DNA from: Octopus sinensis | Taxonomy: Eukaryota | DNA length: 64,000 bases | NCBI RefSeq assembly: GCF_006345805.1 | Contig: NC_042997.1 | Span: 37,820,001 to 37,884,000, forward strand | Direction of reading: 5' to 3' | Position numbers and translations under genes: made by a program | Shown: positions 10,799 through 61,259 of the stretch, in pieces | How the letters are laid out: every line of letters starts with the position of its first letter | Numbering within the stretch: position 1 is the stretch's first letter | The notes under the pieces: model-generated | What the model saw: the letters and a program-made list of their open reading frames with translations, nothing else | What the model was told of the DNA's origin: nothing | Database searches by the model: none

Positions 10799-10964
10799 GA
10801 CGCAAGTGTGGCTGTGTGGTAAGGAGCTTGCTTCCCAACACACATGGTTTCGGGACCAATTCCACAGCGTGACAACTTGGATAGGAAGCGCCTTCTAGTA
10901 TAGCTTCGAGTCGGCCAAAGTCTTGTGGGCTGATTGGGTAGACAGAAACTGAAAGAAGCGCGTC

Positions 10965-10968
<4 letters not shown>
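10799..10968 (+). mobile_element. SINE family B, 5' half ending in (TA)n
   Basis: Diverged match to the head and CORE-like box of the full copy at 21766; ends at gaaagaagcgcgtcgtatatat. Confidence 0.75.
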
Positions 10969-11012
<44 letters not shown>

Positions 11013-11130
11013 CCGTATTTAGGAATGGTCATTTTGACAGTTTAGCCAATAAAAACACACGCACTATATATTTGGCGTTACTTTGCTTCAGCGTTATTTA
11101 TTTTTTAAATTAATCTTAATCTTATTTCGG

Positions 11131-11170
11131 CCAGAATTCTTTCGTCACACTCCTGTGACCTCATCAGTGG
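11131..11170 (-). ncRNA. Minimal type-I hammerhead ribozyme-like motif, canonical core
   Basis: Minus: cca CTGATGA g GTCAC aggagt GTGAC GAAA gaa TTC tgg; stem I cca/tgg, 5-bp stem II, UUC triplet; same strand as, and downstream of, the PLE ORF. Confidence 0.7.
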
Positions 11171-11849
11171 TCCTTTGCTTTTTTCTTTCTTATTTGTGTG
11201 TCTCTCCTTAGTAACGGTCAGCCATTTTGTATTTTTGTATTCCTATTGTATGTGTCTTCATTTGCGCATGCGTATGCCTCTATGTGTGTCTATGTTTAGC
11301 TAGTGTGTGTGGGGGGAAGTGTCTGTAATATTTGTATCTCCTTATACGTTCGTGTAATTTGTTTTTGTTTTTGTTTATTTTTATTTTGTTCATGTGTTTA
11401 CACCTACTTAATATTATTTTTTTATAATTATTATTTTTAATGTATATAGTTATTTACTTGAAATGAAGGTGCGCGTGCATGTCTACATGAGAGAATGTAT
11501 AAGTGTGTGCGTGTGAATGGGGGCTGGTGACTTTGACGTTTGGATGTGTGCGTGTGTAAGTGTGCGCGTCTGTAATATGTGGGTGAGTGGATGATGGTGC
11601 TGGTGCTGGGAAGTGGTCAGTGCTAGTGTATGTTGAGTGGTGTGGGGTGGTGTGATGTGGTGTGTTGGTATGGGGATGAGTGGTGTGGCGATGTTGGGGT
11701 GTGGGGTGTGAGGGTGGGATGTCGATATCTGGGTAGGAGCGGTGAGATGTGTGGGGTTTTGGGGTGGACGGAGGGGTATCAATAAGGGGAGAATGTGGGT
11801 AGGATTGAAGAGAGAACGTATGTATCAGAGTAAGAGAGAAGAGAGGTGG

Positions 11850-13600
11850 GTAGCAGTGAATAGAGGAAGTAGGTGTCAGATAGAGAGAGGAAGGAGTGGA
11901 GTTAGATGAAGGGGGCGGGGAATTAACCACATCGGGTGCTAGTGAGCGAAGAGAGAAGATTAATTCCTGTTTACGGCGAAGGCGGAAGGCCGGATGGCCA
12001 CTGTGGAAAAACAATCCGAACACAGATAGATGTTGTAATGAATGACTGGTAGAGCAAAAATGGCACGGGACAGTGGCGTCATTGCCAAGTCTAACGTCTC
12101 GGAGGTGCTCCACGAACCGGTCAGCCAAGCAGAAGACGGGTAACGGCGAGCGGGTGCGAGAAGCGAGTACTCTGGGAAGGTGAATAGTGGTGAGGGAATA
12201 TCCACGAAGGATGAAGTGGTGAGCCGTGAGTTGAGACTGAGTCTCAAACTCATGATTGTCACTGCAGATCCTACGCAGACAGAGGAATTGGGAGTAGGGA
12301 ATGGAGAGCTGGGTGTAGGTAGGGTAGGAGGAGGAGGAGAAGTTGAGGTATGACTCTGAGTCGGTGTGTTTGTAGTAGATGGATGTAGTGAGAGTGGAGT
12401 GTTGTATCTTGGCCAAAATGTCGAGAATGGCGATGGAAATGCTGGAAAAGGTAAGGAGAATTCGAGGATAGGATGGAAGGATTGGACAAAAGAGAGGAAA
12501 AAGTTTAGTTGTTCGTGAGAGAGCGAGGTTGTACCGATTCAGTCATCAATAGAACGACCTTATAGTTCGGGAGTAGGACCAGTGAATCTTGAAAATATTT
12601 GGGCTTCAACGTAGCTAACGAAGAAGTTCGCATAGATGGAGACCATTCTCGTTCTTATGGCCAATCGCGAGACCTGTTGGTAAAACACCCCTGCGAACGA
12701 CAAGCAGTTGAGGGAAAGAACAACTTTGGCCAGACGTAGGAGCGTGGATGCATCGGGTTGGGGTTTGGGTCGAAGTTCTATGAAGTGTCTGAGGGCAAGA
12801 AATCTTCCATTGTGTGGGAACACCGTATATAGACTCTTGATACTAAGAATGAAGAGAAGTTTCGAGGGGCCAGGAAGGAAGAAGAAAGAGTTGAAACGAC
12901 GGAGAGCATGGTTAGTGTCGTTGATGTTTGAGGGGAGAGAAGCCACTACGGGGTCAAGGATACGGTCGAGGTATTTCGAGATCAGTTCCGTGGGACAGTT
13001 ACAGGCGGAGACGACGGGATGACCAGAGTTGTCGGGCTTGTGGATTTTAGGAAGGAAGTAAATGGTGGGGTGCGAGGTGTGTCGACAATGAGGTTGGAGG
13101 CGGTGGGAGAGAGACGGGAGGAGGAGATGAGGTCATGGATAGTGAGGACACAGTCTGTTGGTAGCTAGGCGTTGGAGAGCAGAGGACAATAGAAGGAGGT
13201 GGCTTGAAGTTGGTGGAGAGCTTCAGCCTTGTAGAGGTCCGGGGACACCTGCAAAAGTTAAACCGGTCCACAACATGTAGGCGGATGCCCGCAAAATGAT
13301 CGACTGCTTTGGAACTGGCCAGGAGCTGGCGTCTAGTGTGGTCGGCAGCCCAGGTCGGTGAAGCAGGCCTCGTCGTTAGATGCAGGTGGAGTGTTGCGGA
13401 ATAGGGCATATAGCCTGACACGGCGCGCAAAGCTATGAATATTAGTACGGATCTGAAATTCGTTACTAGATGGAGTGAGGAGGATGAAGTGCAGACCCCT
13501 AATGAGAAGAGAGCACTCCGGCTCAGAGAGGGAACTGCAGGAAAATTTTCAGGTTTTAAGAGTATCGTGAAAGGCCTCATTGACAGGTCAATCATAGGGA
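11850..13600 (-). mobile_element. Penelope-like retroelement (Neptune-like), decayed RT + GIY-YIG
   Basis: Minus frames: LSEPECSLLIRGLHFILTP..FARRVRLYALF (N-terminal), FYQQVSRLAIRTRMVSIYANFF, GRSIDD (decayed YIDD), YKHTDSESYLNFSSS...IPYSQFLCLRRICS (thumb), DRFVEHLRDVR...CHF...HSLQHLSVFGL (GIY-YIG end); multiple stops and frameshifts. Confidence 0.88.
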
Positions 13601-13635
13601 TTTTTTCATACGGCTACGATAAAAGTAAACGCTGC

Positions 13636-13712
13636 TGAATAAAATCATAATTAATTGATTCACTTGCATTTTCTTTTATTGAACGCCAGGAACTTCTCAA
13701 CAGTCCGCTCTC
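13636..13712 (+). mobile_element. Right-end fragment of the mariner-derived MITE
   Basis: aataaaatcataattaattgattcacttgcattttctttt...gccaggaacttctcaac matches 40535-40600. Confidence 0.6.
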
Positions 13713-13824
13713 TCTCAAATATAATTGTGTGTGTGTATGTGCGTGTGTGTGTGTGTGCTTGTATGTGTGTGCATGTATGTAAGTACACACACACATACAC
13801 ACACACACGCACAGACACACACAA

Positions 13825-13855
<31 letters not shown>

Positions 13856-14043
13856 CACAAACATATATACATACACATTCACACGCACAATTTATGTCAA
13901 AATGATAGTTGATCGTATGAAAAAGGACAACTGCTTTACTGAAACGCTGAAACAAACATCAGTGAGAAAAAAGCGCAAATTCTTATATGTATTTATGTAT
14001 TTATATATATAAATAGGAATATATATATATATATATATATATA

Positions 14044-14089
<46 letters not shown>

Positions 14090-20660: not shown

Positions 20661-21328
20661 TATGAGCATTTATAGGATATAATCGTATATAAACTCAATT
20701 AACAATTAAAGATGGAAGAGAGATGTTGAAAACTTTATAAAATTTTAATCTATGAGTGCGATCGTTTCAAATGATAACACCAGCATGTAAGATACATGAA
20801 AAACATAAAATTAACTATAATTAAATTAAATTGAATTAATAACGTATTACCATTCTCCTCAGTGCAAAAGATGGAGTACATATCAGGAACGGTAGTAACA
20901 GTTTATTACAGGAGAACACATTGAGTCTGTGTCGCAAAACTCAATCGGATATTCACTAATTGATTGTGAAAGATGAAATATAAGAACATGGTTAGGTAAT
21001 ATTTCATCTTTCACAATCAATTTGTGAATATCCGATTGAGTTTTGCGACACAGACTCAATGGGGTCTCCTGTAATATTCTTCTGTTACTACCGTTCCTGA
21101 TGTTTTCGTCATCTTTTACACTGAGGAGAATGATAATATGTAATTAAATTAATTTAATTTAATAATAATTTTAATTAAGTTAATTTTTTTCATGTTTCTT
21201 ATATGTTGGTGTTATCATTTGAAACGATCGTATGCATGGAGTAAATTTTTATAAAACTTTTAACATCTCTTCTTCATCTTTAATTGTTAGTTGAGTTTAT
21301 ATAGGAGTATATCCTATAAATTCTCATA
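20661..21328. repeat. Long inverted repeat: arms 20661-20981 and 20999-21328, 17-bp spacer
   Basis: Arms align as reverse complements along their length; the innermost ~65 bp (cattgagtctgtgtcgcaaaactcaatcggatattcac...gatgaaatat) differ at about one position, outer parts are more diverged. Confidence 0.93.
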
Positions 21329-28260: not shown

Positions 28261-31525
<3,265 letters not shown>

Positions 31526-43689: not shown

Positions 43690-45616
43690 CTCTCTAGTTT
43701 CAGCTCAGAGCTGCGGCCATGCTGGTGCACCACCGTTTTGTGCTACACTGTTATCACTAAGAACTACCTCTAATATGTGGCACTTGGTGAAGAATGGAGA
43801 TTGATAGAGCTACCCTCATTTGCACCTCTTGCCGTGAGGTCGGTTCATCTGGGACTCTCGACAGGAAGAGGTCCAGCTTTGACTTACAAACCCCTACATT
43901 TACTTTGTACAAGTTCCTCAGACTCTTTGGGAGAATATTAAAACGCTGTGGGCCCTTGGAACCCATGTTATGGCAGTAAATGGTCCTGAAGCATGACGGC
44001 ATTGCTGGTATATTTGACACTATGCAGTGTGGTCCCGTTGTGGCATTGTTGTAACTTTCAATGCCAAACTTTGGCACAATTCCTTCCAGGATCTTCCAGA
44101 CATATATCACTGCATACCTCTCCCGTCTTCTCTCCCGAGAGTTGAGTCTTAGCTGTTTCAACCTTTCCCAGTAGCTGAGTTGTTGCAAAGAGACGATCTT
44201 CTTTCTGAATCCTTTCTAGATTGCTTCAAGTTCCGCTGTTAATTTCACACTGGTGGGTGACCATAGCTGTGAGCAGTAATCCAGGTTGCTGAGGACGAAT
44301 GTCCGCCAGAGGTCCATCATGGTTTTTCTTATCTCTGCTTCTGAATATTCTTAGGATCCATCCAGCCAGTCGGCTGTACTTTGTCGCCATCCTGACAATG
44401 TGCACAGAGATATTATCGCTCATGTCGATACCCGGGTCCCTCACTGATTTAGGCTCTGCAATTGAAATTCCCTGTGGACCGGTGGACCCTGTAAGTTTCA
44501 TGTTTAGTTTTGGATGCTATTAGCTCAGGGCTTGGAATTTTTCAGCTTTAAACTGCATATTATTATCCTCAGCAACCTGTAAATTGAATCCAACTCATCG
44601 CTGGCGTTGTGTATTTTCTGCGAGACTTTTGTATCTTCTGCATAGCTTGCCAGAGTGGCTATCCGGGCATTTCTGGGCATATCTGAGAGAGCCACTATAA
44701 AACGCAGTGGTCCCAAGACATTGCCCTGTGGAACACCGCTCACTATTTGTGTGTTCATAGAGGTGGTTCCATTAGCCACTACTGCCTGACTCCTATCTTT
44801 CAGTAAGTCATGTAACCACTCTCCAAGGTTTCCAGGTATGCCAAGGTCACGCAGTTTGTGGCATATCATACCATGATCCATCTTGTCAAAAGCTTTTGCA
44901 AAATCAAGGTATATTACGTCCACATTTGATTTGTTGATTAACTGCCTCAACACCCAGTCATATCCGTTCCATGACTTTGCTGATGTGTGAAGTCAGAGAG
45001 ATAGGCCTATAGTTTTTGGCATCTGCTCTACTTCCCCCTTTATGTATTGGGCATATTATTCCCTCCTTCAGCTTGCTTAGTAATTTGCCATTTGTAAGAA
45101 AGCTCTGGAGGAGAATCTGGAGGGGCTTTACCAGGTCATGCTTACACGATTTGAGGAGGATTGGTGGGAAACCATCAGGACCAGCAGTAGAGTTTGTGTC
45201 CACTTCATCTATGGCTAGTAGTATATCTTTTTCACTAATGTCAATGTATTTCATAGTAGCTGCTTCGCTGGTTATAGATAAGGTGGTAAAGAAGACCACT
45301 GTTTCGTTCACTTGTCTGTTTTCCAACGGGGTGGTAAAGACCCTTTTGAACTGGTCATTCAGCATCTCACTGATATTAGTTGGACTGTCTGTGAGGGAGC
45401 CATCGTTTTGGAGGAGGAGTCCTATCTTGAAGTGTACTGAGACTGTTTCTTTCGCGTAACGAAAGAAGGCCTTTGGGTTTGTCTTAATGTTTTTTATAAC
45501 CCAGGCTCGTTTGTCTGCTTTCTCCCTCACATAGCATTGTTGCAGACTTTTTTCGATCTCCATCAGTGTTGTTTTTAGGCGGGACGTTTCGCTACTTTTG
45601 GGATGGTAGTTGAGTC
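43688..45616 (-). mobile_element. CR1-clade LINE, 5'-truncated, RT and 3' tail
   Basis: ORFs 44958-45563 (AGPDGFPP...KNYRPISLTS), 44525-44953 (YLDFAKAFDK, SGVPQGNVLGP, YAEDTK), 43757-44188 (LSYWERLKQL...RRRERY); catalytic YADD is YAED; frameshifts and a short deletion at ~44955. Confidence 0.95.
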
Positions 45617-47444
45617 GATATACTTATATCCTACCATACATGAAGTTTAGATATCTTACTACTATTAAATAAATACATAAAACAGCATAGTTAGTAATAA
45701 ATAAAAGTGTTCGTAATTCTAAATTTCTAGACAGAACGGAATATATTTAGAATGTCGAAAACAAATATATTATACGTAGAAAACGTTACCTATTGTAACT
45801 AATTTTATGACGGAAAACAGAAATGTAACTATATGACTAAATAGGTGATATAACATTCTTCAACGTTCAACAGAACCATGGAAGGAAACGACAGGGGAAA
45901 TGGGTAGCATTGACCAGAAAAAAGACAGATTAAAACGAAAGATAATCGATACAACTGAAATAGTTGGAGGAATGCCAAAGACAAATTTATAGAGGACAAC
46001 GTTTTATATAGGAATGCACTCTGAAGACTACCGTGTAAAACAAAGGGAAGATTGAAAGAGTCCAAGAGAAGGAGCATAGTGTGGGGATAAATTTAAAAGC
46101 AGTAATACTTTCTTTTGTCTATATATTCAGCAAATACAGCACAGTTTAATAGCTAAAGATATATGAAGTTTCAATTGACCATCTGAATTCACAGGTGTGA
46201 GTAGGAAGTTAGTTATCCAGGAGAAAATGTCAGAAGTGACATAATAATATAACCATCTAAGGATTATATGATTGTGCATATATATATATATATATATATA
46301 TGAAATAACATATAACAAGGCTTTTAAAAGAGAATATATGGTAAGGATCTTTGTTTCAACGTCAAGTTAAAATAAATCGGAATATATTTCAGTGCATATC
46401 GAAAATTGTAAAACAGTATTTTTGAATTTTCTGCTGATGGAACAATTCACATATGTACAGTAGCTAAGTATCTAAAACATTCGAATATTCACTGAAATTT
46501 AAATAAATATTGCTCAAACAGAAATAATGAATATTCTTCCAGATATCACTAGGCACATGCACAAATCTTATAGTTAATGAGTTAACTTACATTCAAGAAG
46601 GAGCGGAAATGTAACTGCTAAATAAGGGTAGGAAGAGAAAAGAAATGAAAAGATAATTTCTTACTACATTTTAGATATAGATTCCTTCATATATAAGTGA
46701 TAATGTTTTCATACAATTATTCACCCAGCGCCCGTCTACAAATTATAGTAAATTATACGTAAAAATACGTAAAAATGTATAGTTCAAATTTGTAGGGAAA
46801 TTATATCCTTTAGCTTGGAAATAGTAATGGGCCTTTCCTGTTGAGTATATATATCTATGCGGGTATACGCACACGCGCGCCACACATTCTCATGCACACA
46901 TACACACACATACGTGTATGCACGTCATTGTTCAGTTTTATTTCAAGATTTCCTGCCAATAGAAAAAGAGCCGGTTTCTAACCTAGATTAAAGGCTCCAT
47001 TGACATTTCAACATCAACAACGGAGTATGTATGTGTGTATATATGTACGTATATATGTATGTATAATCTTCAACGCTATGTAGAAGTACAGTGCTTAATA
47101 TATTTGATATTTGAAGATTCACATTGTGAATAAATCATGAAAAATTTGCAGATCTCCATAGAATTCCTATAATGAGGTCAAATGTAAATTTTTTAAATTA
47201 GAATTTTAAATAAAATGTCATGTGTATAGGGCCGGTGTGATTTGTGTATACATTCAACTAATCAAATTGTATCACTCACTGAAATATAGTAAAGAAAATA
47301 ATCTATTCCAGTTGTACATATAAACTAACGATACATCTAAAACTAAATACTTAGCAACACATATACAAATAATTGATTATCTAAAGAGTGTATTAATGTT
47401 TCAGTTGATACCATCACCTTCAACATGTACATACATATGGGTGT

Positions 47445-48318: not shown

Positions 48319-49137
48319 CACGTGTGTTGATACATAATATGTGGTATGGAAGTGTGTGAGAAAGGCATATATGCCGAAAATAGTTGTAGTATTAGTACTA
48401 ATAAAACAATGAAAAATATCGTAAATCAATCAAGGGTTCTGACAAAATTTCACTAATTTTGCTAGATTTTATTTAATTGTTTATATTATCCTTCTAGTAG
48501 TGGATGCTTTACTAAATTCAATGAGTATAGTCTATATGTTTATTTGTTCCATAGCGACATTAGGTGATTGTCAGTCCTACACAATCTGTCGATTGTGAAG
48601 CACGCGGCTGGCTCACTTCCCAAACTCCACCATAGTGTATCTTTTCATAAACCCAGATGGAATTTATTTTATACATAATCAACGTAGTTACATGTCCATG
48701 TAAAGCATAGATCTTTTCTTCATTTAGGTATTTTAAAGTTATCGTGTTTCTTTAGTTCGCAATAAATATCTGAAACACGTTATAACTATCAATATAATTA
48801 GCAATATACTACTTACACTCACCTTTCACAATGAAGGTACAACCTCTAAAGATATCCTTTAGATATGGAAGAAATAAACAACATAAATCTTGTAAATATG
48901 ACCCTAAAAACAAAACATTATTTACTCATGACACGTCTGTGACATTCGTCGCTTGCAATATTTCCTTTCGTTCTTGCTAGTATAGCATATCTAAAACAAT
49001 TACTAATTTGGGAAGTCCAAATCGTCGAAATTGGAACGTAAGGGTCATACTTCTTTCTTAAATAACAACAACATATACATATACTGATGGACCTACCTAC
49101 TTACCTACCTACATACATACATACATACATACATACA

Positions 49138-49560: not shown

Positions 49561-49957
49561 TTTTTCTTTCTATTTTCATTCACGTGTTTCAGTCATTTTG
49601 ACTGTGACAATGCTGGAGCACCGCCTTTAGTGGAGCAAGACCACACGACTTATTCTTTGTAAGCCTAGTACTTATTCTGTCAGTGTCTTTTGCCTAACAC
49701 TTTAAGTTACGGGGGTGTAATAGAATCAGTTGCCAAGCGATGTTGGGTAGACACAGACACACAAACATATTTTCACACAAACATATTCACACACACACAT
49801 ATATACATATATACGACGGGCTTCTTTCAGTTTCCGTCTACCAAATCCACTCACAAGGTCTTGGTCGGCCCGAGGCTATAGTAGAAGACACTTGCCCAAG
49901 GTGCTACGCAGTGGGACTGAACCCGGAACCATGTCGTCGGTAAACAAGCTACTTACC

Positions 49958-52641: not shown

Positions 52642-52983
52642 GTACCTTGGGAAAGTGTCTTCTACTATAGCCTCGGGTCGACCAAGACCTTGTGAGTGGA
52701 TTTGGTAGACGGAAACTGAAAGAAGCCCGTCGTATATATGTAAATATATGTATATATGTATGTGTGTGAATATGTTTGTGTGTCTGTGTTTGTCCACCCA
52801 ATATCGCTTGGCAACCGATTCTGGTGTGTTTACACCCCCGAAACTTAAAGGGTTCGGCAAAAGACACCGATAGAATAAGTACTAGGCTTACAAAGAATAA
52901 GTTGTGGGGTCTTGATCCACTAAAGGCGGTGCTCCAGCATGGTCACAGTCAAATAGTTGAATAACTGAACTGAAAATAAAAAG
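52642..52983 (+). mobile_element. SINE family B, 5'-truncated
   Basis: Starts at ccttgggaaagtgtcttctactatagcc; internal (TA)/(TG); tail ggcggtgctccagcatgg. Confidence 0.87.
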
Positions 52984-54723: not shown

Positions 54724-54791
<68 letters not shown>

Positions 54792-54963
54792 CATATATAC
54801 GACAGGCTTCTTTCAGTTTCCGTCTACCAAATCCACTCACAAGGCATTGGTCGGCCCGGGGCTATAGCAGAAGACACTTGCCCAAGATGCCACGCAGTGG
54901 GACTGAACCCGGAATCATGTGGTTGGTAAGCAAGCTACTTACCACACAGCCACTCCTGCGCCT
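54520..54963 (-). mobile_element. SINE family B, full length, young
   Basis: Nearly identical to the reverse complement of 21766-22165, with a different internal (CA)n(TA)n length. Confidence 0.93.
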
Positions 54964-58479: not shown

Positions 58480-59900
58480 GGATCTGATCAACAACACCTA
58501 AACCAGCATCTGCAACCGGCGTGAACTACCAGCGAGGGTCAAAAGGAACTTCACTACACGCAACAGCAAATTGCCTACAATTGACCACTCAGTCAAGACC
58601 TATAGTCTCCGGCACAGAGAGACCATTTTACAAAATTTCGTATCTCCTATTCGCAATCCGGAGACATTGTCAACCTAACCGCTGCATGTCAACAGTCTGG
58701 CTGAGATCATCCAGCGACTGCACCGACACATTCAGACGTAACAGTTATATTTTCAGACTAGACGTGGTATCACTCTACACTTCGGTTTCTGAACTCTCCA
58801 CGACTGGCCTGATGACGGAATATTGTCGCCTCTTCAAACGAACCATATTCATTATCCTCCAGTTACCTTCAGTGATAGTTGCCAACACACAGTTTGATTT
58901 CCTCTACAATGCATATATACAACGTTCAGGTCCGTCTGTGCTGTGCAGTCACTGCTTGCTTTTACTTACCTAGACTGGTTGGAGCGCAGAGCACATAGTA
59001 TCTGCGACTTCCTCACCAGGTAGCTGGACAATATCTTCAGCTTCACTTCATCTCATGAAAATGCCTCCACAACACTGGAAACTCTCAACGCTATGGTCCT
59101 GCACATCGCTCTCACCATCGAACATCCGAACGACGATGGTTCCCTCATCTCGATTGACTTTCCTTTAAACATCATGGACAGGCAGTTTACCGAGACCTTT
59201 TCATCCATTACAAATTGGACCTCTCGCTGGATGATAAGGTCAACTACATACAATATGAGAATGCCCATATACATCAGAAGCAGTGAGAGCGCCAGGTAGG
59301 ACACACGGTCTGCGCAGTTCCTCAAGATATTTGAAACACGCGGATATTCAGCACCCGTTGCAAACACCCAACACAGATAAAAAACCAAATAAATGGAATC
59401 TCTCTACGACCTGCTTTCTGACGATTTCCCTTTTCAACGAGAAGGCCATCCGTGAGATTATCCGCAGGGAAGGACTGGCTTTCCTGCTAGCCTATTTGGG
59501 ACCGCCTTTGCTTAGACACTTGTAGTGGAGGCGATCAAACGTAGAACAACAGTCCGGGACACTGTCCTATCCTGGAGACAAGCAAGTGTCTGCGAATATA
59601 CGTGGAGTACTAGATACAGTGTTCCAAATGCGGTGACTATTAAATCGGTAATACAGTCCGACCGTTACATATGTGACTAAAAGTACGCCTGACTACCAAT
59701 GCGTCTTCTACAAGTATGTAATTAAATGCGGCAACATCACCTAAGACGTAGATGCTTCATTATTGGCCATGGAGTGGAATAAATAGAATCTCCATCTGAT
59801 GGAGCCTTTACTGATCCAGCACCCTAATCCGAAGATCAATAGTTTATCGGAGTTTAGCCGGTGGCTCTTATAAGCAATCAAGCACTCCCCACATCACTAC
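58480..59900 (+). mobile_element. Second Penelope-like element, heavily decayed RT + GIY-YIG
   Basis: SRPIVSGTERPFYKIS, FRLDVVSLYTSV, LNAMVLHIALTIEHPNDDGSL, and IQCSKCGDY*IGNTVRPLHM (GIY-YIG with CxxC). Confidence 0.78.
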
Positions 59901-60616
59901 GAACACGACAATCATCATCAGCACTTCGACTGTGATTAGAACTATTGCCTACCAGCACTGAGATCGCAGCTGCCATAGCCATCATCGCTGCAGTTGCCTG
60001 TCACTATGTGTGATGAGCATTGTTGCTGTTGCCAGCCACTACCTAGTCAATGACTACAGGTATATACACCACCAACGCCCTCGCTGTCTACTACCACGAC
60101 ATTTACTACTATGGCCAACAATATTGATGTTCACAGCGACATCACAACGGAATTTACCATTGCTACGACCATCGATTACTACCACGGCATTTACCACCTT
60201 CATCACCGTTGCTGCCTGCCTACAGCTGGTTTTCGACAGCAATCTTCAGAATGACCTCTGAGTGACCAACATAGTGACCAACAATCTTCAGAGTGACCAT
60301 GGAACCAATAGCATCATCGGTTGGGAAGCTGCTGCTACAAATACAAGCACCAGACCGTACCCTTCTCATAATGTTTCTTTGCACGCGAAATATATAAGGA
60401 TTTTTCTATTTTCATCTCTACAGTGTTAGAACTTCTTTCATTCCCCATTTCGTTCATCTTTATACTACTGAAATCTTATACTTCCATAAATATTTTGATT
60501 CTTCCTACATGTTTATCTTTCTAGCACTATTTATGACAAATAATTTACCCCTGGAGTGTAGAAACTACGAAGATGAGTTATACATCAGCAAGTCATACCT
60601 ATATATATATATATAT

Positions 60617-60834
60617 AACAATTGCAGCGTGGAAGGTGTTTGTAAGCCATTTAAGAAACACACAAAAGCCGTTCGATTCACTTCAACATTTAAGTTTAAT
60701 TTGTCAAAATATTTTCGTCGCTAAAATCCGCGACCTGTTCACTGACAAAAATTAAACTTAAATGTTGAAGTGAATCGAACGGCTTTTGTGTGTTTCTTAA
60801 ATGGCTTACAAACACCTTCCGCGCTGCAATTGTT
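60617..60834. repeat. Near-perfect inverted repeat (arms 60617-60706 and 60743-60834) around a 36-nt hammerhead core
   Basis: Arms differ by one substitution and a 2-nt indel; (TA)n immediately to the left. Confidence 0.96.
60702..60747 (-). ncRNA. Type-I hammerhead-like motif with swapped G3-C8 pair
   Basis: Minus: TGTCA GTGAACA g GTCGC ggatttta GCGAC GAAA atat TT TGACA; 5-bp stems I and II, AATATT palindrome, UUU triplet. Confidence 0.75.
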
Positions 60835-60871
60835 TTCAGATCAAATCACTTACTATGCGAGTACATCTCCG

Positions 60872-60906
<35 letters not shown>

Positions 60907-60998
60907 TCCCGGGTTGAGTCGGGGTTAACCACAGTAAATAAGGTACTCAATACATAGCAGAGTAAATTAATTTATTCTACAGAAGGAGCTTCTACAGG

Positions 60999-61036
60999 AC
61001 TAGAACTGTTTCATTCAAAAGAAATCATCAGGAAGC
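60999..61036 (-). ncRNA. Eroded hammerhead-like motif, canonical core
   Basis: Minus: gcttc CTGATGA tTTC tttt GAAt GAAA cagttc TA g; stem II only 3 bp with a U.U at 10.1-11.1; stem I poor. Confidence 0.4.
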
Positions 61037-61259
61037 TAGTAGACAAGAGTTGTTTTGCATTTATACATTTAGGCAGGTTTAAATGGGTGGTGGTGGGGGA
61101 CTTTTTGGGGGTAGGCATGGCGCAAAAACTGTCATTATAAGGGGAGTGGTCAAAGGAATCGGTGGTAAAGTATATAAAAGAATAAATAAAAGAATAAAAA
61201 AATAAAAAAATATAAATAGAAAAATAGGGTTTTAGGCAAGCAGGGAGACTCCCACTTGT

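What the first reader, a model, noticed from the sequence alone, without database searches (positions are those of the whole stretch)
60617..60834. Hammerhead with a compensated G3-C8 core capping a ~90-bp perfect RNA rod
Seen: the core reads GUGAACA instead of CUGANGA, so C3 and G8 are both changed; G5, A6, A9 and GAAA are intact, stems I and II are perfect, and the flanks extend stem I into a ~90-bp duplex. Known: C3-G8 is a Watson-Crick pair in the active hammerhead, and swapping it partly rescues cleavage. Inference: a double compensatory change is unlikely to be decay, so this may be a natural functional variant that canonical-motif searches miss. The rod-plus-ribozyme shape is viroid/retrozyme-like and could reflect fold-back priming during PLE reverse transcription.
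Basis: partly seen in the sequence, partly recalled or inferred. Interest (0 to 1): 0.92.

Follow-up and report, generated by a model that had tools for sequence, protein, structure and literature searches.

The report
Inverted Penelope-like insertion with variant hammerhead
The hairpin is most likely the scar of a Penelope-like retrotransposon that inserted twice, head to head, into a TA microsatellite, and it preserves that element's small hammerhead ribozyme in a form where the core's one Watson-Crick pair is swapped (G3-C8), which is a modest new variant, not a viroid-like RNA.

Summary
Arms 60617-60702 and 60749-60834 form an 86-bp inverted repeat with one mismatch. The 46-nt spacer reads, on the minus strand, as a type I hammerhead with G3 and C8.

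An unpaired G follows A9. A decayed Penelope-like element (PLE) at ~11.0-14.0 kb in the same window carries a canonical-core hammerhead of the same design.

The motif has all three published hallmarks of PLE minimal hammerheads: an extra base after A9, a G10.1-C11.1 pair and a palindromic loop 3. Such a motif appeared in 0 of 300 simulated windows.

The surroundings match known PLE insertion architecture: pure (TA)n on both sides, two inverted 5'-truncated copies, a 39-nt tail on one side only, and 90 nt from the predicted cut to the copy end.

The rod is therefore a DNA-level by-product of integration, not a viroid- or retrozyme-like RNA.

The near-identical arms argue that G3 and C8 were already in the source RNA. 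A natural 3-8 swap (U3-A8) is already published, and I met it twice in PLE loci fetched here, so G3-C8 is a new variant of a known kind.

No second copy of this family could be fetched. Whether the swap is fixed in the family, and whether this ribozyme cleaves, remain untested.

The parts
60600..60617 (.). (TA)9 microsatellite abutting the left end; the last A overlaps the first base of the inverted repeat. Left half of the presumed target.
   Evidence: Sequence; list of TA runs; test for abutting runs.
60617..60702 (-). Left arm. Read on the minus strand, this is the part of the longer PLE copy downstream of the cut. It ends without a tail at the (TA)9.
   Evidence: Inverted repeat I1; strand assignment follows from the hammerhead orientation.
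60703..60746 (-). PLE-type minimal type I hammerhead motif. Stem I is GUCA/UGAC. Core is G3(60742) U G A A C8(60737) A9. Unpaired G at 60735. Stem II spans 60717-60734. GAAA is 60716-60713. Loop 3 AUAU is 60712-60709. U16.1 is 60708 and U17 is 60707. Predicted cut lies between 60707 and 60706.
   Evidence: The three hallmarks are listed in PMC4209133.
60747..60748 (.). 2-nt bulge. The A-run after UGAC is A5 in the short copy and A3 in the long copy.
60749..60834 (+). Right arm. This is the short inverted PLE copy, sense on the plus strand. With TGAC (60743-60746) and AA (60747-60748) counted, it starts at hammerhead position 1.1; the start is ambiguous within 0-6 nt of the predicted cut.
   Evidence: The one arm difference (60821 G against A at the partner 60630) is synonymous in the possible ORF that starts at 60801.
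60835..60873 (+). 39-nt unique 'tail', present on this side only.
   Evidence: No match elsewhere in the window. PLE tails of 30-40 nt are described in PMC8557442 and PMC11167929. Locus L022 has a 30-nt one-sided tail.
60874..60904 (.). (AT)15 microsatellite. Right half of the presumed target.
11131..11170 (-). Comparator in the same window: a PLE minimal hammerhead with a canonical core, cca CUGAUGA g GUCACA-GGAG-UGUGAC GAAA gaau UC|ugg. It lies 123 nt upstream of the element's 3' end at a (TA)22 run.
12452..13069 (-). Decayed PLE reverse transcriptase belonging to the same element as the 11.1-kb hammerhead. That element spans ~11011-14044 and has (TA)n on both sides.
   Evidence: tblastn: 129 HSPs from the 120 fetched PLE proteins fall in this region. 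27% identity to Poseidon_Ac, including the LPKIHK motif. TA runs.
58596..58940 (+). Second, older PLE reverse-transcriptase fragment 1.7 kb upstream of the finding, with RPIVS and DVVSLYT motifs. No link to the hairpin was shown.

Best explanation
The 257-bp unit 60617-60873 is a dead, non-autonomous scar of Penelope-like element (PLE) integration into a (TA)n microsatellite.

Proposed steps:
1. The PLE endonuclease cut both strands of the TA run, and each 3'-OH primed reverse transcription of PLE RNA.
2. The cDNA on one strand started at the proximal internal start site. It copied 90 nt and then ran through the element's minimal hammerhead. This is the long copy (sense on the minus strand, 60748 to 60617).
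3. The cDNA on the other strand started about 39 nt further along the RNA, which produced the one-sided tail. It ended at or within 6 nt of the hammerhead cleavage site. This is the short copy (sense on the plus strand, about 60743 to 60873).
4. The two cDNAs have the same sense, so they can pair only where the RNA is self-complementary. They were probably joined through the 4-nt stem I complement (GTCA/TGAC). That placement puts the ribozyme exactly at the apex and turns the two copies into an 86-90-bp hairpin.

The hammerhead is a genuine PLE-type minimal ribozyme motif whose 3-8 pair is G-C instead of C-G. The swap was most likely already present in the source RNA.

Shown: the sequence anatomy, the excess over chance, the flanks, and the parallels with real PLEs.
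Inferred: priming on both strands, microhomology joining, PLE origin of the tail, and any catalytic activity.
For: 1. Motif class. One unpaired base after A9, G10.1-C11.1 and a palindromic loop 3 are the three descriptor-independent hallmarks of PLE hammerheads (PMC4209133). All three are present. Chance gave 0 such motifs in 300 simulated windows.

2. The same descriptor recovers real PLE hammerheads:
- Poseidon_Ac.
- L021, L022 and L024, all C3-G8.
- L020 and L026, both U3-A8.
- One attached to a PLE reverse-transcriptase remnant in this very window. It shares the extra G, a GUCNC/GNGAC stem II, a 4-nt loop 3 and a cut before UG.

3. Insertion architecture:
- Pure TA runs abut both ends. A random 257-bp segment does so at 5 of 63,743 positions.
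- PLEs favour (TA)n or AT-rich targets, carry inverted 5'-truncated copies and have 30-40-nt one-sided tails (PMC8557442).
- Poseidon_Ac protein cuts and extends both strands, from two internal start sites whose spacing equals the tail (PMC11167929).
- L022 shows an inverted truncated copy, a 30-nt tail at one end only, and a main copy starting within 2 nt of the cut. L026 also shows an inverted truncated copy.

4. Cut-to-end distance is 90 nt here. It is 82-89 in Poseidon_Ac (cut at +29, RT start at +111-118), 56 and 86 in L022, about 54 in L026 and 123 in the window's own PLE.

5. The arms differ at 1 of 86 positions. Two in-situ substitutions at exactly positions 3 and 8 are therefore very unlikely, on the order of 1e-5 or less (my estimate).

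6. The region downstream of the cut is weakly colinear with that of the 11-kb PLE (p about 0.01-0.03).
Against: - No second copy of this family was found in the window, in viral contigs, in metagenome contigs (chance hits only) or in genome contigs (chance hits only). PLE origin therefore rests on architecture, not on homology to a coding PLE.
- A search with the possible N-terminal peptide found nothing.
- The similarity to the window's other PLE is only marginally significant.
- The PLE origin of the tail is assumed.
- Gene conversion between the arms could make the insertion look younger than it is.
- (TA)n runs are very common here: 65 runs of at least 8 units.
- Rfam gives no hammerhead hit. 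It also misses the canonical-core PLE hammerhead at 11.1 kb, so this negative carries little weight.
Confidence: 0.75

Rival explanations
1. Same PLE origin, but made by snap-back. A single target-primed cDNA ran through the hammerhead, folded back on its own stem I complement (GTCA/TGAC) and primed second-strand synthesis on itself.
For: It explains why the apex is bounded exactly by stem I and why the arms are nearly identical.
Against: Copying the first cDNA back would put the same sequence at both outer ends. Instead, a 39-nt unique tail follows only the right arm, and the left arm abuts (TA)9 directly. One-sided tails and extension of both strands are what the PLE enzyme does in vitro. 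The A3/A5 difference between the copies needs an extra slippage event.
Confidence: 0.1
2. A foldback or MITE-type DNA transposon whose internal loop resembles a hammerhead by chance.
For: The whole unit is a hairpin. Rfam's only matches are long-hairpin plant microRNA families (MIR1435, MIR812), below their gathering scores. The window holds another long foldback at 20661-21328.
Against: - No target-site duplication is visible.
- No other copy exists in 64 kb.
- The one-sided tail is asymmetric.
- A motif with all PLE-hammerhead hallmarks is expected less than once per 300 windows, and it sits exactly at the apex.
- A true PLE with the same hammerhead design is in the window.
Confidence: 0.07
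3. A functional structured RNA: a viroid- or retrozyme-like rod with an active G3-C8 hammerhead, or a hairpin gene that yields small RNAs.
For: The rod is very stable on both strands. The compensated core suggests selection on the ribozyme somewhere in its history.
Against: - Single hammerhead, no tandem or circular-permuted unit, no second copy.
- A monomeric motif with a 1-bp stem III needs a partner to cleave (PMC4209133).
- The rod is fully accounted for by two DNA copies.
- No conservation data exist.
Confidence: 0.04
4. An assembly or read artefact, such as a fold-back chimeric read.
For: Palindromes and PLE complexes are known to trouble assemblies (PMC8557442).
Against: The repeat is short (218 bp) and embedded in unique sequence. 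It has an asymmetric spacer, a mismatch, a 2-nt indel and a one-sided tail. This is not the exact, kilobase-scale mirror that an artefact gives.
Confidence: 0.03

Closest known systems
Minimal type I hammerheads of Penelope-like elements (Cervera and De la Pena 2014, PMC4209133)
   Same: Short stem I (4 bp native). One unpaired base between A9 and G10.1. G10.1-C11.1 pair. Stem III reduced to A15.1-U16.1 with a palindromic loop, which implies action as a dimer. Located tens of nt from the element's 3' end. Opposite-strand pairs of such motifs 100-700 bp apart are reported.
   Different: The core 3-8 pair is G-C rather than C-G or the published U-A. Loop 3 is AUAU (the Poseidon-type loci fetched here have CG). 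Only one of the two inverted copies retains the ribozyme.
Natural U3-A8 covariant of PLE hammerheads (Schistosoma Cercyon, PMC4209133; also seen here in loci L020 and L026)
   Same: The single Watson-Crick pair of the catalytic core is replaced by another Watson-Crick pair, with the rest of the core intact.
   Different: A different pair (G-C). It is known here from one truncated copy, not from a family attached to intact open reading frames.
C3G/G8C laboratory double mutant of the Poseidon_Ac hammerhead (Frangieh et al. 2024, PMC11167929)
   Same: The same two base changes in a PLE hammerhead. Each single mutant is dead, and the double mutant partly restores protein-assisted cleavage.
   Different: That one was engineered; this one occurs in a genome. 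Its activity has not been measured.
PLE complex insertions: an inverted 5'-truncated copy plus a one-sided 30-40-nt tail in (TA)n (Craig et al. 2021, PMC8557442)
   Same: TA-microsatellite target, head-to-head copies, a 39-nt tail at one end only, severe 5' truncation.
   Different: Both copies are truncated to about 90-130 nt, so no coding sequence remains. The junction falls at the ribozyme's stem I.
Twin priming of L1 elements (from my own knowledge)
   Same: Both target strands prime cDNA synthesis, giving an inverted pair joined internally, often at microhomology.
   Different: In L1 the two arms usually come from different parts of the RNA, so no long hairpin forms. Here both start near the same 3' site.

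Membership tests
Hammerhead ribozyme (type I, PLE minimal class) | Conserved core bases U4 G5 A6 A9, G12 A13 A14, A15.1-U16.1, and H17 not G | tested here: met
   All are present on the minus strand at 60703-60746.
Hammerhead ribozyme (type I, PLE minimal class) | C3 and G8 identities | tested here: not met
   G3 (60742) and C8 (60737). Watson-Crick complementarity is kept. A U3-A8 natural variant is accepted in this class (L020 and L026).
Hammerhead ribozyme (type I, PLE minimal class) | Stems I and II flank the core in type I order | tested here: met
   Stem I is GUCA/UGAC. Stem II is GUCGC/GCGAC with an 8-nt loop.
Hammerhead ribozyme (type I, PLE minimal class) | PLE hallmarks: an unpaired base between positions 9 and 10.1, G10.1-C11.1, and a palindromic 15.x-16.x/loop 3 | tested here: met
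   Extra G at 60735. G-C closes stem II. AAUAUU is self-complementary. The hallmarks are listed.
Hammerhead ribozyme (type I, PLE minimal class) | Match to a curated covariance model | tested here: inconclusive
   No Rfam hammerhead hit at E <= 10. The canonical-core PLE hammerhead at 11131-11170 is missed too.
Hammerhead ribozyme (type I, PLE minimal class) | Conservation or covariation across copies of the family | tested here: inconclusive
   No second copy could be found in any collection available here.
Hammerhead ribozyme (type I, PLE minimal class) | Site-specific self-cleavage | not testable with these tools
   Needs a cleavage assay. Indirect hint only: the short copy begins 0-6 nt from the predicted cut.
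Penelope-like element insertion | Reverse transcriptase and GIY-YIG endonuclease coding sequence | tested here: not met
   None lies within 60617-60873. PLE reverse-transcriptase remnants lie elsewhere in the window, at 12452-13069(-) and 58596-58940(+). The unit would be a 5'-truncated, non-coding fragment.
Penelope-like element insertion | Insertion into (TA)n or AT-rich DNA | tested here: met
   (TA)9 and (AT)15 abut the unit. A random segment does so at 5 of 63,743 positions.
Penelope-like element insertion | An adjacent inverted 5'-truncated copy | tested here: met
   86-nt inverted arms. The same layout occurs in L022 and L026.
Penelope-like element insertion | A 30-40-nt tail at one end only, derived from the PLE | tested here: inconclusive
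   A 39-nt one-sided unique segment is present. Its PLE origin could not be checked without other copies.
Penelope-like element insertion | Sequence homology to a PLE | tested here: inconclusive
   Weak colinear similarity to the 3' region of the window's own PLE, p about 0.01-0.03. The similarity to its 5' region is not significant.
Retrozyme / viroid-like circular RNA | Two hammerheads, or tandem units, that delimit a monomer able to circularise | tested here: not met
   One motif only, no tandem repeat of the unit.
MITE / foldback DNA transposon | Target-site duplication and multiple dispersed copies | tested here: not met
   No duplication is visible at the ends. No other copy in the window. 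A genome-wide count was not possible.

The most novel reading that the evidence does not exclude
G3-C8 is the fixed catalytic core of a recently active PLE family in this (probably cephalopod) genome. The short copy's 5' end at position 1.1 records in-vivo self-cleavage by that variant ribozyme. If so, head-to-head PLE junctions would be a genomic read-out of hammerhead processing during PLE retrotransposition, a role still unproven for PLE hammerheads.
Probability: 0.3. Interest if true: 0.6.

Novelty: new variant of a known kind. Interest (0 to 1): 0.4.

Why it matters
If a whole PLE family carries G3-C8, all three alternative Watson-Crick pairs would be close to documented at the one base pair of the hammerhead core. 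That would confirm in nature what mutagenesis showed, and it would show that CUGANGA-based descriptors and Rfam models undercount PLE hammerheads. Rfam missed even the canonical-core one in this window.

The junction geometry matters more for mobile-element biology. One copy ends at the predicted cleavage site, and the two copies join at stem I. This suggests a purely genomic test of whether PLE hammerheads cleave in vivo and define the 5' end of the RNA template. The 2024 in vitro work left that question open.

For the locus itself the consequence is ordinary: a dead transposon scar that could at most yield hairpin-derived small RNAs.

Tried and rejected
- My first scan for canonical hammerheads reported none in the window. 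That was wrong.
- Rfam at gathering and at E <= 10 gave no hammerhead. I rejected this as evidence after the control.
- Searches for other copies all failed:
  - window BLAST and 3-mismatch pattern search: none;
  - Viral contigs, two scans: none;
  - Metagenome contigs: 14 chance matches, all but one in contigs of 50-68% GC;
  - Genome contigs: 4 chance matches in bacterial genome bins (MAGs).
- Exact-protein look-up of 10 window ORFs found none in the collection.
- A phmmer search with the possible N-terminus MAYKHLPRCNCFQIKSLTMRVHLRN... gave no hits, so there is no evidence that the arms are coding.
- A search from Poseidon_Ac protein for cephalopod PLEs returned only vertebrate, insect, spider and unnamed metagenome or Logan hits in the top 120.
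- Relatives of the window's own PLE gave hammerheads with C-G or U-A, never G-C.
- An alignment of the finding to the 5' region of the 11-kb PLE looked suggestive (score 43). It is not significant after correcting for four tests.
- A third descriptor hit at 48356(+), with G3/A8, lacks a Watson-Crick pair and any PLE context. I judged it chance.
- No hammerhead was found for the PLE fragment at 58.6 kb.

Full report
**1. What is there**

The repeat finder gives arms 60617-60702 and 60749-60834. They are 86 nt long and 99% complementary, with 46 nt between them. Either strand folds into a single rod: -157 kcal/mol, z = -26 on the minus strand and z = -30 on the plus strand against dinucleotide shuffles.

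The minus-strand spacer parses as follows:
- UU
- GUCA (stem I, 2.4-2.1)
- G3 U4 G5 A6 A7 C8 A9
- one unpaired G
- GUCGC-GGAUUUUA-GCGAC (stem II)
- G12 A13 A14 A15.1
- AUAU
- U16.1 U17
- UGAC (stem I, 1.1-1.4)

The rod is not perfect, though. It has one mismatch (60630 opposite 60821) and a 2-nt bulge (60747-60748). The unpaired G after A9 went unmentioned.

**2. More than chance**

I wrote a descriptor for a type I hammerhead without helix III and left positions 3 and 8 free. In first-order Markov simulations of the window it hits 0.12 times per 64 kb (both strands). With a Watson-Crick 3-8 pair it hits 0.04 times. With an extra base after A9, G10.1-C11.1 and a palindromic loop 3 added, it hit 0 times in 300 simulations.

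**3. Which kind of hammerhead**

Cervera and De la Pena (PMC4209133) describe minimal hammerheads in the pseudo-LTRs of Penelope-like elements (PLEs). They name the features that emerged without being in their descriptor:
- a base between positions 9 and 10.1;
- a conserved G10.1-C11.1 pair;
- a palindromic 15.2-16.2/loop 3, which points to action as dimers.

The finding has all three. AAUAUU is self-complementary. They also report a natural U3-A8 covariant with about 1,300 hits in Schistosoma.

My descriptor recovered the hammerheads of real PLEs:
- Poseidon_Ac, from the paper's supplement;
- three loci fetched through PLE proteins, L021 and L022 with C-G and L020 with U-A;
- relatives of the window's own PLE, L024 with C-G and L026 with U-A on both strands.

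All of them carry one unpaired base after A9 and G10.1-C11.1.

**4. A PLE in the same window**

tblastn with the 120 fetched PLE proteins gave 129 HSPs in the 12.0-12.5 kb bin, the best spanning 12452-13084(-). Poseidon_Ac aligns to 12452-13069(-) at 27% identity and includes the LPKIHK motif.

That element runs from about 14044 to 11011 on the minus strand and has (TA)n on both sides. A hammerhead with a canonical core sits 123 nt before its 3' end: cca CUGAUGA g GUCACA-GGAG-UGUGAC GAAA gaau UC|ugg. It shares four design features with the finding: the extra G, a stem II of the form GUCNC/GNGAC, a 4-nt loop 3, and a cut before UG.

Rfam misses it as well, even at E <= 10. The Rfam negatives for the finding are therefore uninformative.

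With the looser descriptor, the class 'Watson-Crick 3-8 + extra base + G10.1-C11.1' is expected 0.005 times per window and is seen twice.

The 90 nt downstream of the cut align weakly but colinearly with the corresponding region of this PLE (p about 0.03 by shuffling, 0.013 against random window segments).

A second, older PLE reverse-transcriptase fragment, with RPIVS and DVVSLYT motifs, lies at 58596-58940(+). I could not link it to the hairpin.

**5. Why there is a rod**

The unit is bounded by pure TA repeats: (TA)9 ending at 60617 and (AT)15 from 60874. A 39-nt unique segment (60835-60873) lies between the right arm and the repeat. TA runs cover 3.4% of the window. A random 257-bp segment abuts runs on both sides at only 5 of 63,743 positions.

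Published PLE insertion features match this layout:
- strong 5' truncation;
- an inverted 5'-truncated copy next to the main copy;
- a 30-40-bp tail at one end;
- a bias for (TA)n (PMC8557442).

Frangieh et al. (PMC11167929) showed that purified Poseidon_Ac protein cuts and extends both strands of an AT-rich target. It starts reverse transcription at two internal RNA sites, and the spacing between them is the tail.

In Poseidon_Ac the hammerhead cut is at +29 and reverse transcription starts at +111-118, which is 82-89 nt downstream. Here the distance from the cut to the arm end is 4 + 86 = 90 nt, and the other copy extends 39 nt further.

Locus L022, a weevil PLE, shows the same grammar:
- an inverted truncated copy;
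- a 30-nt tail on one end only;
- cut-to-end distances of 56 and 86 nt;
- an 11-bp target duplication;
- a main copy whose 5' end lies within 2 nt of the cut.

L026 also has an inverted truncated copy.

I therefore read the finding as two cDNAs primed from the two strands of one TA run. The long copy has its sense on the minus strand (60748 to 60617) and no tail. The short copy has its sense on the plus strand (about 60743 to 60873) and carries the tail. The rod is a consequence at the DNA level.

**6. Why the ribozyme sits at the apex (inference)**

Two cDNAs of the same sense can pair only where the RNA is self-complementary. The 3' end of a cDNA that stops at position 1.1 ends in ...GTCA. 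A cDNA that has copied through stem I ends in ...TGAC. These four bases pair, which would join the copies exactly where they are joined.

Equally, a template already cut by its hammerhead would make the short cDNA run off at 1.1. Stem I is self-complementary by definition, so the true junction cannot be placed more precisely than 0-6 nt from the cut. The two ideas cannot be separated on one copy.

It does not explain the one-sided tail.

**7. Is G3-C8 decay?**

The arms differ at 1 of 86 positions. If that reflects time since insertion, the chance of two later substitutions at precisely positions 3 and 8 giving a complementary pair is on the order of 1e-5 or less (my estimate). Among all double substitutions in the 13 conserved core bases, only 3 of 702 keep a Watson-Crick 3-8 pair. 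The swap was therefore very probably in the source RNA, and the intact rest of the core suggests constraint in that lineage.

Caveats:
- Arm-to-arm gene conversion could hide the true age.
- The finding was selected for looking compensated.
- Hammerhead activity is not needed for Poseidon_Ac insertion in vitro.
- Minimal PLE hammerheads cleave poorly in vitro.
- In the minimum-free-energy fold G3 pairs with U17, a competing inactive pairing.

The same double mutant (C3G/G8C) of a PLE hammerhead is partly active, while each single mutant is dead.

**8. What could not be done**

No other copy of this family could be reached. There is none in the window and none in viral contigs. Only chance matches turned up in metagenome and prokaryote collections. 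The possible N-terminal peptide gave no protein hit, and no exact protein matches were found.

The host is probably a cephalopod. A LINE reverse-transcriptase fragment at 44961-45623(-) has its best named matches in Octopus sinensis and O. bimaculoides, at 55-59% identity. This is inference. I found no route to cephalopod PLE loci.

**9. Verdict**

The object is a known kind of thing, a PLE insertion scar containing a PLE minimal hammerhead.

The G3-C8 core is a plausible natural covariant, new in detail but not in principle. In the eight PLE hammerheads I looked at, the 3-8 pair was C-G five times, U-A twice and G-C once, and always Watson-Crick.

The viroid/retrozyme reading is not supported. 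Interest is moderate. It lies mainly in the testable idea that junctions of inverted PLE copies record hammerhead cleavage.

Noticed in passing
window 11011-14044 (-): A decayed Penelope-like element flanked by (TA)n on both sides. It has a reverse-transcriptase remnant at 12452-13069, an endonuclease-like remnant further downstream, and a canonical-core minimal hammerhead at 11131-11170. An ENA metagenome scaffold (L023) is 70% identical over 1,061 nt to 12199-13240.
   Followed up: yes
window 58596-58940 (+): A second, older PLE reverse-transcriptase fragment (RPIVS...DVVSLYT...Y.Q.SG) 1.7 kb upstream of the hairpin. No hammerhead or boundaries were found for it.
   Followed up: partly
window 10900-11400 and 60400-61050: Rfam 15 hammerhead models detect neither the canonical-core nor the G3-C8 PLE minimal hammerhead, even at E <= 10. 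Standard annotation will therefore undercount this class.
   Followed up: yes
L020 2807 (+); L026 8125 (+) and 5761 (-): Natural U3-A8 hammerhead cores in two unrelated PLE loci, one from an ENA contig and one from the brittle star Amphiura filiformis. Each has the extra base after A9 and a CG loop 3.
   Followed up: partly
L022 2189-5428: A weevil (Sitophilus oryzae) PLE with textbook architecture: an inverted 5'-truncated copy carrying a 30-nt tail, a main copy that starts 2 nt before the hammerhead cut, and an 11-bp target duplication (TATTTTGTGTT).
   Followed up: yes
window 20661-21328: A foldback palindrome of about 670 bp. The outer arms are 163 nt at 85% complementarity, and pairing continues towards the centre near 20990. 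It lies next to a (TA)n run. Its nature is unknown.
   Followed up: no
window 49753-49902, 52644-52793, 54739-54886: Three copies of a ~150-nt dispersed repeat, 86-87% similar, in mixed orientation.
   Followed up: no
window 43760-45623 (-): A decayed LINE-type reverse transcriptase (RVT_1, NYRPISL motif, several stops). Its best named relatives are in Octopus sinensis and O. bimaculoides, which suggests a cephalopod host.
   Followed up: partly
window 28925-29293 (-): A weak Pif1 2B-domain/helicase match (E = 0.002), possibly a Helitron remnant.
   Followed up: no
window 48356-48396 (+): A hammerhead-like string with G3/A8 (tgt GUGAGAA a GGCAUAUAUGCC GAAA auag UU|gua). It has no Watson-Crick 3-8 pair and no PLE context, so it is probably chance. 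A SINE-like sequence lies just upstream.
   Followed up: partly
whole window: Very high microsatellite load: 65 (TA)n runs of at least 8 units in 64 kb, plus long CA/TA compound arrays at 61.2-62.2 and 63.0-63.9 kb.
   Followed up: partly
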